From Macrostomum lignano (lineage: Eukaryota), in contig NIVC01000334.1 of assembly GCA_002269645.1 (NCBI GenBank), positions 1 through 64,000 of the forward strand: DNA of 64,000 nucleotides, in the 5' to 3' direction. The notes beneath the pieces were generated by a model that made no database searches, was not told the origin of the DNA, and saw nothing but the letters and a program-made list of their open reading frames with translations. Position 1 is the first letter of the stretch, and every line of letters begins with the position of its first letter. This document shows positions 28,339 through 31,300 of the stretch, piece after piece. The position numbers and the translations under genes are program-made.

Positions 28339-31300
28339 ATGTCTATTTCGACTACTTTCAGTAGTGAAATCGAAAAAGCCACCCCATTAAAAAACCTTTT
28401 CTTCTGTCGCTCGCCGGACTAATCGGAGGCGCGCACTCGTCCTCCGTGAAGAGGCTGGTCAGCTTGGCCGTGCAGGCGCAGCCTCAGCCTCCGACAGATG
28501 GCGCCGGCAAAGAGAAAGCTGTTAAATCGTTAATTAAACGGTTAAAGAAAAATGAGCAGGCCAAATTGTTGGAACGGGCGCTGTCCGAGCAAAATGCCGC
28601 CACCGCCTGCGTCACTGCGACAGTCGGCGATTCAGCCGATCCCGAGCCGCTGCACGTGGTCGCCTGCCGGCTGTGGCGCTGGCCTGACTTGCAGACTCCG
28701 CAGGAGCTGCGACCGCTTGAGCACTGCCAGCATCCTTATAGGTAAAGTATAGGCTGACTAAGCATTGCCAGCATCCGTATAGGTAAGGTATAGGCTGGCT
28801 AAGCATTGCCAGCATCCGTATAGGTAAGGTATAGGCTGGCTGAGCACTGCCAGCATCCGTATAGGTAAAGCTATAGGCTGGCTGAGCACGGGACTTGCCT
28901 GGAGTTTGGAACTGTGACCCCCTCTGTAGCTGTGACCCTTCTGTAGCTGTGACCCCTTCTGTAGCTGTGACCCCCTCTGTAGCTGTGACCCTTCTGTATC
29001 TGTGACCCCTTCTGTAGCTGTGACCCCCTCTGTAGCTGTCATTCTTTCTCTGTCATTCTGTCAGTCCCTCTGTCGCTGTCACCCCTCTGTAGCTGTCAGT
29101 CCCTCTGTAGCTGTCAGTCCCTCTGTCGCTGTCACCCTCTGTAGCTGTCATTCCCTCTGTCGCTGTCACCCCTTTGTAGCTGTCACCCCTCTGTAGCTGT
29201 CAGTCCCTCTGTCGCTGTCACCCCTCTGTAGCTGTCAGTCCCTCCCTCTGTAGCTGTCAGTCCCTCCCTCTGTAGCTGTCAGTCCCTCCCTCTGTAGCTG
29301 TCACCCCTCTGTAGCTGTCAGTCCCTCCCTCTGTAGCTGTCAGTCCCTCCCTCTGTAGCTGTCAGTCCCTCTGTAGCTGTCACCCCTCTGTAGCTGTCAC
29401 CCCTCTGTAGCTGTCATCCCCTCTGTAGCTGTCACCCCTCTGTAGCTGTCACCCCTCTGTAGCTGTCACCCCTCTGTAGCTGTCACCCCTCTGTAGCTGT
29501 CATCCCCTCTGTAGCTGTCAGTCCCTCTGTAGCTGTCAGTCCCTCTGTCGCTGTCACCCCTCTGTAGCTGTCAGTCCCTCTGTAGCTGTCAGTCCCTCTG
29601 TAGCTGTCAGTCCCTCTGTAGCTGTCACCCCTCTGTAGCTGTCGCCCCGATTGAGGTCTTTGCCAAACCATTAGAATTCAGAGGTAATTGCGATTTCAGA
29701 CGTTGAGTATGCGGTGGAGAATAAATAGATACTCCATCAGGGGCTGGTCGGGGTCTGGGATCGGGGATAAATTCCCCAGTTCATTCGCTGCAAACTTTAC
29801 TAGTTAGGGCTGCGACATTGCCATGGAGGACCCCAGGAGCAGCCGCATCCCATTCACCCCGATCCTGTTTCCTGATTTCAGATCCCGTTTCGTCGGCGAC
29901 TTGTGCGTCAACCCGATGCACTATCAGCGCCTGCTAGCTGGAGCCACCTCCCAGGAGCCTGTCATCGTCTATTCGGCCGCCGCCGCCATCGCAGCCGCCG
30001 CTGCCGCGGGCCCCGTGTTCTCCTTCAACGGTGCCGCCGCTGGCACCTCCGGTTCTACGGCATCTTCGCCGACAGCTGCCGGCGCGCCTAGTCCGCCCCT
30101 GTCTGTGCACCAGCAGCTGTCGCCTGCCGCCTATATGAGCGAGGATAATTATTCGGCTGGGGATCCCGACAGTCCGCTGCAGCACCATCACCAGCAGCAC
30201 CATCACCAGCAGCACCAACAACAGCAGTACAATGAGCATGTGAGAGCTTTGGCTGAGTATAGGGTCTCTGAGACGATGTGCAATTTACTTTAGAATTTGG
30301 GTATATAACAGCTAGTTATAGCCTGACTGTCTGTAGGACAGGTAAATAACAGCTAGTTATAGCCTGACTGTCTGTAGGACAGGTAAATAGCAGCTAGTTA
30401 CAGCCTGACTGTCTGTAGGACAGGTAAATAGCAGCTAGTTACAGCCTGACTGTCTGTAGGACAGGTAAATAGCAGCTAGTTACAGCCTGACTGTCTGTAG
30501 GACAGGTAAATAACAGCTAGTTACAGCCTGACTGTCTGTAGGACAGGTAAATAACAGCTAGTTACAGCCTGACTGTCTGTAGGACAGGTAAATAGCAGCT
30601 AGTTACAGCCTGACTGTCTGTAGGACAGGTAAATAGCAGCTAGTTACAGCCTGACTGTCTGTAGGACAGGTAAATAACAGCTAGTTACAGCCTGACTGTC
30701 TGTAGGACAGGTAAATAGCAGCTAGTTACAGCCTGACTGTCTGTAGGACAGGTAAATAGCAGCTAGTTACAGCCTACTAAGTACATGTATATGTTTGTTA
30801 AAAAACTCAATATTTGGTCATTTTCAGAACCAGGCGATGCAGCAGCAGTTGCAGCAGCAGCTGGGCGGCCTGCTCAGCGTGCCCTACATGGACGCTGAGC
30901 ACTGGTGCTCGGTGCACTACTACGAGCTGAGCAGCCGTGTCGGAGACGCCTACTACGCCACGTCGCCATTTGTCACGGTGGACGGCGGCACAAATCCCAG
31001 CGGCCGGGGCCGCTTCTGCCTCGGCCTGCTGTCCAACGTCAATCGGACCCTGGCCGTTGAACAGACCCGCCGGTCGATCGGGTCGGGCGTCGGGCTCTAC
31101 TATGTCAACGGCGAGGTGCACGCCGAGTGCCTGTCGGACAGTCCGGTGTTCATCCAGTCTCCCAACGGCAACATCAGGCACAATTGGCACCCAGCCACCG
31201 TGTGCCGGATCCCGCCCGGCTGCAACCTGTGCGTGTTCTCAATACGCGACTTCGGCAACCAGCTGCGCCAGAGTGCGGCCAAGAGCTTCGACGAGGTGTA

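What the first reader, a model, noticed from the sequence alone, without database searches (positions are those of the whole stretch)
28608..28660. R-SMAD MH1 has lost the DNA-binding beta-hairpin but kept its zinc site
Canonical R-SMADs read [27 protein letters not shown], and the RLQVSHRKG hairpin makes the base contacts. Here the segment is [21 protein letters not shown], about 6 aa shorter, acidic, and with no intron that could hide the missing part. The four Zn ligands ([14 protein letters not shown]), the [14 protein letters not shown]2 and SSXS are all intact. The prediction is a receptor-activated SMAD that cannot bind DNA directly and acts as a cofactor-dependent or competitive modulator. 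This reaches a SMAD2-exon-3-like outcome by deletion.
Basis: partly seen in the sequence, partly recalled or inferred. Interest (0 to 1): 0.75.

Follow-up and report, generated by a model that had tools for sequence, protein, structure and literature searches.

The report
Flatworm R-SMAD lacking its DNA-reading hairpin
A Macrostomum lignano receptor-regulated SMAD gene keeps the zinc-bound MH1 fold, the MH2 domain and the SSXS tail, but a short acidic loop replaces the DNA-contacting beta-hairpin; this is a real, old and selectively maintained change that most likely leaves the protein dependent on partners for DNA targeting.

Summary
Window 28608-28660 (+) lies in the main MH1 exon of a three-exon SMAD gene of the flatworm Macrostomum lignano. 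Pfam finds MH1 (5e-23) and MH2 (1.6e-60), and the protein ends in SSIS. Between the first zinc cysteine and helix 3 there are 12 residues ([12 protein letters not shown], net charge -3) where canonical SMADs have 18. R74, Q76 and K81 (SMAD3 numbering) are gone; all four zinc ligands and the KRLKK motif remain. AlphaFold2 (pLDDT 86) gives an MH1 fold (TM 0.67-0.76 to SMAD3/SMAD2beta) with no beta2-beta3 hairpin. No hairpin-like exon exists elsewhere in the 64 kb. A second M. lignano paralogue (dS about 0.87) has the same short loop and a conserved DPEP motif. dN/dS is 0.12 (MH2) and 0.18 (MH1 block), so the deletion is old and maintained, not an artefact. Loss of direct, sequence-specific DNA binding is a strong inference but untested. 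The SMAD2 exon-3 analogy is outdated, because SMAD2 does bind DNA. Closer precedents are the MH1-less AR-Smads of tapeworms and hairpin-eroded SMADs seen here in rotifers, acanthocephalans and nematodes. Caveats: the 5' end and start codon are unresolved, there is no transcript evidence, and AR versus BR class is only suggested.

The parts
28339..28360 (+). Candidate start codon plus 7 codons (MSISTTF). It is 107 nt, not a multiple of 3, upstream of the VKRL codon. It is usable only through a 68-nt mini-intron (28361-28428, GTAGTG...AG) or if the A6 run at 28389-28394 is one base short.
   Evidence: The paralogue L001 has an ATG at the equivalent place that is in frame and continuous. Unresolved.
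28431..28741 (+). Main MH1 exon (AHSSSVKRL...EHCQHPY), ending at donor AG|GTAAAG.
   Evidence: Pfam MH1 5.3e-23; PDB SMAD3 MH1 2e-21.
28536..28550 (+). KRLKK, the equivalent of the SMAD3 K40-K44 basic (NLS) motif in helix 2.
28608..28610 (+). Zinc ligand Cys (SMAD3 C64 equivalent).
   Evidence: Invariant column; ligand identity from PMC5727232.
28617..28652 (+). [12 protein letters not shown]: a 12-residue acidic loop replacing the 18-residue beta2-beta3 DNA-binding hairpin. Equivalents of L71, D72, R74, Q76, S78, H79 and K81 are absent.
   Evidence: The AF2 model shows coil at residues 61-68 between beta1 and helix 3.
28653..28694 (+). [14 protein letters not shown], the conserved helix 3 that follows the hairpin.
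28725..28727 (+). Zinc ligand Cys (SMAD3 C109 equivalent; EHC).
29882..30239 (+). Exon 2: the end of MH1 (LCVNPMHY, with Cys at 29904-29906 and His at 29919-29921 as zinc ligands) plus an Ala/Gln/His-rich linker. The PPxY motif is replaced by SPAAY (30120-30146). Acceptor tttcag|A, donor CAT|GTGAGA.
30828..31487 (+). Exon 3: the MH2 domain. L3 loop [11 protein letters not shown] is at 31362-31394, the SSIS phospho-acceptor tail at 31473-31484 and the TGA stop at 31485-31487.
   Evidence: Pfam MH2 1.6e-60.

Best explanation
This is a functional, lineage-specific R-Smad of Macrostomum lignano, with AR (Smad2/3)-like signature residues. Its MH1 domain has lost the beta2-beta3 DNA-reading hairpin but keeps the zinc-stabilised core. 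Shown: the domain architecture, the deletion, its presence in two old paralogues, and purifying selection. Inferred: a type I TGF-beta/activin-family receptor phosphorylates the SSIS tail. The MH2 domain then assembles with the Co-Smad and with partner transcription factors, and these supply the DNA contacts. The hairpin-less MH1 serves non-DNA roles, such as the basic KRLKK import motif, intramolecular regulation of MH2, or protein contacts. The protein would therefore transduce the signal without reading GTCT or 5GC motifs itself.
For: MH1, MH2 and SSIS are present. The 6-residue gap removes R74, Q76 and K81, while the zinc ligands and KRLKK are kept. AF2 on the full MH1 gives pLDDT 86.2 and pTM 0.78, with beta1, an 8-residue loop and then helix 3, and no hairpin. 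Foldseek top hits are SMAD3 and SMAD2beta MH1 at TM 0.67-0.76. The paralogue (GenBank PAA67835.1, locus L001, plus UniProt A0A1I8F9A2) reads CVTAAVAQGDPEPGHVTAC, equally short and with DPEP conserved. Window versus L001 gives dS 0.87 and dN/dS 0.12 over 137 MH2 codons, and 0.18 over 29 MH1 codons. The older assembly's model of the same gene (A0A1I8FSD9) has the same segment. The MH2 best hits are Smad2/3-type, including cestode SmadC at 65%. AR-type signatures are RRQ.VT, QSPN.N and WHPATVC.IPPGCNL. From the literature, the hairpin residues are strictly conserved and make the base contacts (PMC5727232). An R114A+K121A SMAD2 mutant is folded but does not bind DNA (PMC6824466). MH1-less AR-Smads of Echinococcus are still phosphorylated by receptors (PMC10073696).
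Against: There is no transcript, protein or binding data. The start codon is unresolved, because ATG 28339 is out of frame by one base with the main ORF. The L3 loop has Leu where AR-Smads have Thr and BR-Smads have Asp. An NJ tree does not place the gene inside either clade. MH1 evolves faster than MH2: 57% against 83% identity between the paralogues, and 42-50% against SMAD3 compared with 67.5% for a canonical tapeworm Smad2/3. That fits relaxed constraint but also fits slow decay. The conserved trimer-region motif GFTDPS is GGTNPS here. I could not check whether M. lignano has a Co-Smad or a canonical Smad2/3.
Confidence: 0.55

Rival explanations
1. Competitive attenuator. The protein is phosphorylated and binds the Co-Smad, but the complexes it forms carry fewer DNA-reading hairpins. 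It then dampens or redirects signalling by a canonical AR-Smad rather than transducing on its own.
For: It has the same architecture as the best explanation. It also deviates in ways that could change turnover or assembly: PPxY becomes SPAAY, GFTDPS becomes GGTNPS, and the L3 loop Thr becomes Leu.
Against: No canonical M. lignano Smad2/3 was retrieved here to compete with. Tapeworm AR-Smads without MH1 are regarded as the pathway's transducers, not its inhibitors.
Confidence: 0.2
2. Decaying or unexpressed duplicate. The hairpin loss is one step in the erosion of a redundant copy in a highly duplicated genome.
For: No ATG is in frame and contiguous with the main ORF. The public models of this gene family are frame-shifted. 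MH1 is fast-evolving.
Against: The reading frame is intact over 437 codons and three exons, with canonical GT-AG sites. dN/dS is 0.12-0.18 at dS about 0.87. All zinc ligands, the L3 loop core and SSXS are kept in both paralogues. The L001 indels all sit in C/G runs, and the two public assemblies disagree on them, which points to sequencing errors.
Confidence: 0.13
3. The MH1 still binds DNA by another surface, for example the basic helix 2, with low or altered specificity.
For: The equivalents of SMAD3 K33 and K41 are retained as K and R, and the MH1 fold is preserved.
Against: Seven of the ten residues listed as DNA-contacting in SMAD3 lie in the deleted segment, and the H101 equivalent is Gln. 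The replacement loop has net charge -3 and two prolines. Hairpin point mutants abolish binding in SMAD2.
Confidence: 0.1
4. Assembly or gene-model artefact: the hairpin exists but was lost through misassembly or mis-splicing.
For: The locus is full of tandem repeats, and earlier assemblies carry indel errors.
Against: The segment is a continuous in-frame stretch inside one exon. The same short segment occurs in the older assembly's model of this gene and in the paralogue in two assemblies. No hairpin-like coding sequence exists in the 64 kb.
Confidence: 0.02

Closest known systems
Canonical AR-Smads (SMAD3, SMAD2beta; PDB 1OZJ, 5OD6, 6H3R)
   Same: MH1 fold with the Cys3His zinc site, the basic helix-2 motif, the MH2 domain, L3 loop RRQ.VT, SSXS tail; MH2 63-65% identical.
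   Different: The beta2-beta3 hairpin is absent (R74, Q76 and K81 missing). MH1 is only 42-50% identical. The PPxY linker motif is lost, and the second specificity residue of the L3 loop is Leu.
Full-length vertebrate SMAD2 (E3 insert)
   Same: An AR-type Smad with a lesion next to the DNA-binding hairpin, historically regarded as non-DNA-binding.
   Different: SMAD2 keeps an intact hairpin and binds DNA conditionally; the insert only occludes it in some conformers (PMC6824466). Here the hairpin itself is deleted, so the loss should be constitutive.
MH1-less AR-Smads of tapeworms (Echinococcus EmSmadA and EmSmadC) and C. elegans DAF-14 (the latter from my own knowledge)
   Same: R-Smads of flatworms or nematodes that retain MH2, L3 loop and SXS, are receptor substrates, and cannot read DNA through an MH1 hairpin. 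EgSmadC is among the best MH2 hits at 65%.
   Different: They lack the whole MH1 domain. Here the zinc-bound MH1 core and its basic motif are retained and conserved between paralogues. The NJ tree does not group the Macrostomum genes with the cestode ones.
Hairpin-eroded SMADs in other fast-evolving lineages (bdelloid rotifers Adineta and Didymodactylos, acanthocephalan Pomphorhynchus, nematode DAF-8-like proteins, glass sponge Vazella)
   Same: MH1 is recognisable with the WRW helix and the Cys/His ligands, but the R.Q....K hairpin is replaced or shortened.
   Different: These are independent sequences with different replacement loops. None shares the DPEP loop, and most keep roughly the canonical length rather than a clean 6-residue deletion.
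Inhibitory Smads (SMAD6/7, Dad)
   Same: A degenerate MH1 without a canonical DNA hairpin.
   Different: I-Smads lack the C-terminal SSXS motif; this protein ends in SSIS and has an R-Smad-type L3 loop.

Membership tests
SMAD family (R-Smad class) | N-terminal MH1 domain | tested here: met
   Pfam PF03165 5.3e-23, 81.6 bits against a cut-off of 25; Foldseek TM 0.67-0.76 to SMAD3/2/5/1 MH1.
SMAD family (R-Smad class) | C-terminal MH2 domain | tested here: met
   Pfam PF03166 1.6e-60, full-length match 1-174/174.
SMAD family (R-Smad class) | C-terminal SSXS receptor phosphorylation motif | tested here: met
   The protein ends ...GPSSIS, then stop; the paralogue ends SSMS.
SMAD family (R-Smad class) | Cys3His zinc site of MH1 (SMAD3 C64, C109, C121, H126) | tested here: met
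   All four align and are invariant columns; ligand identities from PMC5727232. Metal binding itself was not tested.
SMAD family (R-Smad class) | [quoted passage not shown] | tested here: not met
   A 6-residue gap, none of the three residues present, and no hairpin in the AF2 model.
SMAD family (R-Smad class) | Sequence-specific binding to GTCT/5GC DNA | not testable with these tools
   Needs EMSA or a similar assay.
AR-Smad (Smad2/3) subclass | L3-loop specificity residues (Arg and Thr in RRQTVTS; His and Asp in BR-Smads) | tested here: inconclusive
   [11 protein letters not shown]: the first residue is AR-type (Arg); the second is Leu, which is neither class. It is the same in the paralogue.
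AR-Smad (Smad2/3) subclass | Phylogenetic placement within the Smad2/3 clade | tested here: inconclusive
   In the NJ tree of MH2 the two Macrostomum genes form a long branch outside both the AR and BR clades. Identity leans AR: 65.5-69.1% against 62.4-64.4%. The top database hits are Smad2/3-type.
AR-Smad (Smad2/3) subclass | Linker PPxY motif | tested here: not met
   SPAAYMSED in place of PPGY(I/L)SED.
Inhibitory Smad | Absence of the SSXS tail | tested here: not met
   SSIS is present, so this is not an I-Smad.
Processed or decayed pseudogene | Frameshifts or stops in the coding exons, and neutral dN/dS | tested here: not met
   No stop or frameshift in the three main exons; dN/dS 0.12-0.18. 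Only the link to a start codon is unresolved.

The most novel reading that the evidence does not exclude
A hairpin-less but zinc-intact MH1 may be a stable, selected domain state in Macrostomum, held in two paralogues since a duplication at dS of about 0.87 and with a conserved DPEP replacement loop. In that reading the MH1 of an R-Smad has been repurposed for a non-DNA function. It could be an evolutionary intermediate on the route to the MH1-less AR-Smads of parasitic flatworms.
Probability: 0.35. Interest if true: 0.6.

Novelty: new variant of a known kind. Interest (0 to 1): 0.45.

Why it matters
The three hairpin residues are described as strictly conserved in all R-Smads and Smad4. A naturally occurring R-Smad that deletes exactly this element, yet keeps the rest of MH1 under purifying selection, is a natural separation-of-function allele. 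It would let one ask what MH1 does apart from reading DNA, in a transgenic, RNAi-amenable regenerating flatworm. It also adds a data point for how flatworm TGF-beta/activin signalling came to use DNA-blind R-Smads. The effect on the field would be incremental, because R-Smads without a working MH1 are already known.

Tried and rejected
1. The search for homologous proteins timed out twice with the full protein or full MH1. With shorter MH1 queries it found no usable candidates. Only the MH2 query worked, and it returned no Macrostomum proteins.

2. AF2 on the exon-1 translation alone gave an unusable model (pLDDT 62). It was replaced by the full MH1 with 51 sequences.

Exact look-ups of the exon-3 ORF found nothing, so no transcript-derived contigs were obtained.

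4. The NJ tree of MH2 did not resolve AR against BR membership.

5. I tried to find canonical M. lignano SMADs among the search representatives, by amino-acid composition and cluster look-up. None turned up.

6. A hidden intron or alternative hairpin exon was rejected.

7. SL trans-splicing at the conserved ...TCAG|TAG site upstream was considered as the source of the start codon. I rejected it because the next in-frame codons are stops.

8. A literature search found no description of Macrostomum R-Smads.
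Full report
**What is at the coordinates**

The + strand around 28.3-31.5 kb carries a SMAD gene. The main MH1 exon runs to 28741, ending at donor AG|GTAAAG. Exon 2 is 29882-30239 (acceptor tttcag|A, donor CAT|GTGAGA). Exon 3 is 30828-31487 and ends in TGA. The spliced product from the VKRL codon at 28446 is 437 residues. Pfam finds MH1 (5.3e-23) and MH2 (1.6e-60, full length), and the protein ends ...GPSSIS.

The flagged interval 28608-28660 reads [18 protein letters not shown], in one uninterrupted frame.

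**Is the hairpin really missing?**

Yes.
- phmmer against PDB sequences aligns the domain to SMAD3, SMAD2beta, SMAD5, SMAD9, SMAD1 and SMAD4 MH1 (E 2e-21 to 3e-10). Every alignment opens a gap in ...[16 protein letters not shown]....
- A MAFFT alignment with nine other SMADs gives the same picture: 12 residues between CVT and HV against 18.
- The Cys-to-Cys spacing across the hairpin is 19 here. It is 25 in 59 of 89 MH1-bearing representatives that I sampled.
- The loop [12 protein letters not shown] has net charge -3, against +3 for the canonical segment.
- Martin-Malpartida et al. [quoted passage not shown] They also list Lys33, Lys41, Leu71, Asp72, Ser78, His79 and His101 as further contacts. 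Only the Lys33 and Lys41 equivalents (K and R) survive here.
- The four zinc ligands (C64, C109, C121, H126 equivalents) are present and are invariant alignment columns. KRLKK occupies the position of SMAD3 KKLKK.
- The segment cannot hide an intron; the only GT...AG pair is 13 nt apart. tblastn with human SMAD1 and a six-frame motif scan of all 64 kb (one chance hit on the opposite strand at 41243) found no alternative hairpin exon.

**Structure**

AlphaFold2 on the exon-1 translation alone was poor (pLDDT 62). With the complete MH1 and a 51-sequence alignment the model has mean pLDDT 86.2 and pTM 0.78. Strand beta1 is TATV (residues 57-60), followed by an 8-residue coil (GDSADPEP, residues 61-68) and then helix 3 (LHVVACRLW, residues 69-77). 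There is no beta2-beta3 hairpin.

Foldseek against the PDB returns only SMAD MH1 domains at the top, with TM 0.67-0.76 for SMAD3, SMAD2beta and SMAD5; the next unrelated fold is far weaker. The core fold is therefore predicted to survive the deletion.

**Organism and relatives**

An exhaustive HMMER search of 1.8 billion representatives gave three close hits, identified by cluster look-ups:
- A0A1I8FSD9, Macrostomum lignano, 88% identical. This is the same gene from an older assembly, read through frameshifts.
- PAA67835.1 (BOX15_Mlig017485g1), M. lignano, 67% identical. This is a paralogue.
- A0A1I8F9A2, M. lignano. This is the paralogue in the older assembly.

The window is therefore M. lignano, which fits its GC-rich exons embedded in tandem arrays.

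I fetched the paralogue locus (L001 = NIVC01001450.1). Read in the correct frames, its MH1 is ...[36 protein letters not shown].... It is equally short (11 residues between CVT and HV), and CVTA.V, DPEP and HV.AC are conserved.

The paralogue's public sequence has several single-base indels, all in C/G runs. The two public assemblies disagree on them. I take them to be sequencing errors, but a real pseudogene is not excluded.

**Selection**

Nei-Gojobori estimates for the window gene against L001:

| Region | Codons | dS | dN | dN/dS |
|---|---|---|---|---|
| MH2, C-terminal part | 137 | 0.87 | 0.104 | 0.12 |
| MH1 block after the loop | 29 | 0.70 | 0.127 | 0.18 |

The deletion therefore predates an old duplication, and both domains have been under purifying selection since.

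MH1 is nevertheless the faster domain. The paralogues are 57% identical in MH1 against about 83% in MH2. Against SMAD3 the MH1 is 42-50% identical, where a canonical tapeworm Smad2/3 scores 67.5%. That fits partial release of constraint after loss of the DNA-reading function.

**Which kind of R-Smad?**

The best MH2 hits are Smad2/3-type, including Echinococcus granulosus SmadC and its Taenia and Anoplocephala homologues at 65%. Several AR-type signatures are present: RRQ.VT in the L3 loop, QSPN.N, and WHPATVC.IPPGCNL.

Against that, the second L3 specificity residue is Leu (Thr in AR-Smads, Asp in BR-Smads). The identity margin is small: 65.5-69.1% to an AR reference against 62.4-64.4% to SMAD1. 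An NJ bootstrap tree leaves the two Macrostomum genes (100% support as sisters) on a long branch outside both clades. I call it AR-like, not a proven AR-Smad. It is not an I-Smad, because SSIS is present.

**Mechanism**

Shown:
- the MH1-MH2-SSXS architecture;
- constitutive absence of the DNA-reading hairpin;
- a retained zinc core and basic motif;
- conservation of this state across two paralogues under purifying selection.

Inferred from established SMAD biology:
- A type I receptor phosphorylates the SSIS tail, and the MH2 domain trimerises with the Co-Smad and recruits partner transcription factors.
- DNA targeting comes from those partners.
- The MH1 domain is kept for import, autoinhibition or protein contacts.

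The inference that DNA binding is lost rests on two literature points. The hairpin residues make the base contacts. A folded SMAD2 R114A+K121A double mutant no longer binds DNA. I put 0.55 on the cofactor-dependent transducer reading, 0.2 on a competitive attenuator, 0.13 on a non-functional copy, 0.1 on residual or alternative DNA binding, and 0.02 on an artefact.

**Comparison with what is known**

Aragon et al. 2019 showed that the E3 insert leaves the hairpin intact and that full-length SMAD2 binds DNA conditionally.

[quoted passage not shown] They have no MH1 domain at all, yet Echinococcus and human receptors phosphorylate them. C. elegans DAF-14 is another case, from my own knowledge.

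My survey also turned up SMADs with eroded hairpins in bdelloid rotifers, an acanthocephalan, nematode DAF-8-like proteins and a glass sponge. What is particular here is a clean deletion of the hairpin within an otherwise conserved, zinc-competent MH1. I found no paper describing Macrostomum R-Smads. I rate it a new variant of a known kind.

**Caveats**

1. The 5' end is unresolved. The nearest ATG (28339) is 107 nt upstream of the VKRL codon, so it is out of frame by one base. Two things would fix this: a 68-nt mini-intron (28361-28428, GTAGTG...CTAAT..AG), giving MSISTTFS|AHSSSVKRL, or one extra A in the A6 run at 28389-28394. The paralogue has an in-frame, continuous ATG at the equivalent place.
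2. No transcript evidence could be obtained with these tools.
3. I could not search the M. lignano genome for a canonical Smad2/3 or Co-Smad, so the idea of a modulator acting alongside a canonical paralogue is untested.
4. Zinc binding, phosphorylation and DNA binding are all predictions.

**Verdict**

Interest is moderate (0.45).

Noticed in passing
window 28720-28889: A 41-bp tandem repeat (4.1 copies, 93% matches) begins inside the MH1 exon. It re-copies the last 22 nt of the exon together with the GT splice donor, giving four near-identical donors in a row. Only the first is compatible with the reading frame, because TAA follows in frame.
   Followed up: partly
window 27636-28310, 28912-29648, 30300-30775, 31510-31870; L001 1889-2662: Every intron and flank of the SMAD gene is filled by a different tandem array: 22 bp x30, 18/35 bp x40, 41 bp x11.6, and (CTGT)n directly after the stop codon. 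The paralogue has a (GACA)n-filled intron inside MH2 that the window gene lacks. It lacks the window gene's linker intron, and its first intron sits about 4 codons further 3'. Intron positions have therefore changed between the paralogues, each time in association with repeat arrays.
   Followed up: partly
window 28339-28446: The candidate start codon is out of frame by one base with the main ORF. There is an A6 homopolymer at 28389-28394. The paralogue's equivalent region is a continuous in-frame ORF, and its residues ([14 protein letters not shown]) are conserved.
   Followed up: partly
window 30120-30146 and 30984-31001: The linker PPxY motif (the WW-domain ligase and YAP docking site in canonical R-Smads) is replaced by SPAAY, and by SPSVY in the paralogue. 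The conserved MH2 motif GFTDPS is GGTNPS here and GGTDPS in the paralogue.
   Followed up: no
window 30179-30227: A 15-bp repeat (3.3 copies) encodes a His/Gln tract ([15 protein letters not shown]) in the linker. The older-assembly gene model skips this part.
   Followed up: no
L001 660-1900 (NIVC01001450.1) and UniProt A0A1I8FSD9 / A0A1I8F9A2: The public protein models of this SMAD pair are conceptual translations that run through single-base indels in C/G runs. As deposited, they hide the zinc cysteine and parts of MH2. The two assemblies disagree on the indel positions.
   Followed up: partly
window 25041-26755 (+), 38239-43671 (+), 53859-54332 (-), 16769-17251 (-): The neighbouring genes are ordinary: a BcrAD_BadFG (N-acetylglucosamine-kinase-like) ATPase, an SH3-SH3-RhoGEF-BAR protein (DNMBP/Tuba-like architecture), a bestrophin C-terminal exon, and RCC1 repeats.
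   Followed up: partly
window 52-831, 17277-18269, 31495-31870: Long (CTGT)n/(GACA)n microsatellites produce spurious CLSV-repeat ORFs of 150-330 codons. These should not be mistaken for genes.
   Followed up: no
proteins P0019/P0151, P0021, P0015, P0028, P0043, P0061, P0080, P0100, P0123: SMADs with recognisable MH1 domains but eroded or shortened DNA hairpins recur in bdelloid rotifers, an acanthocephalan, nematodes, a glass sponge and some unidentified transcriptome assemblies. This suggests repeated independent loss of the hairpin.
   Followed up: partly
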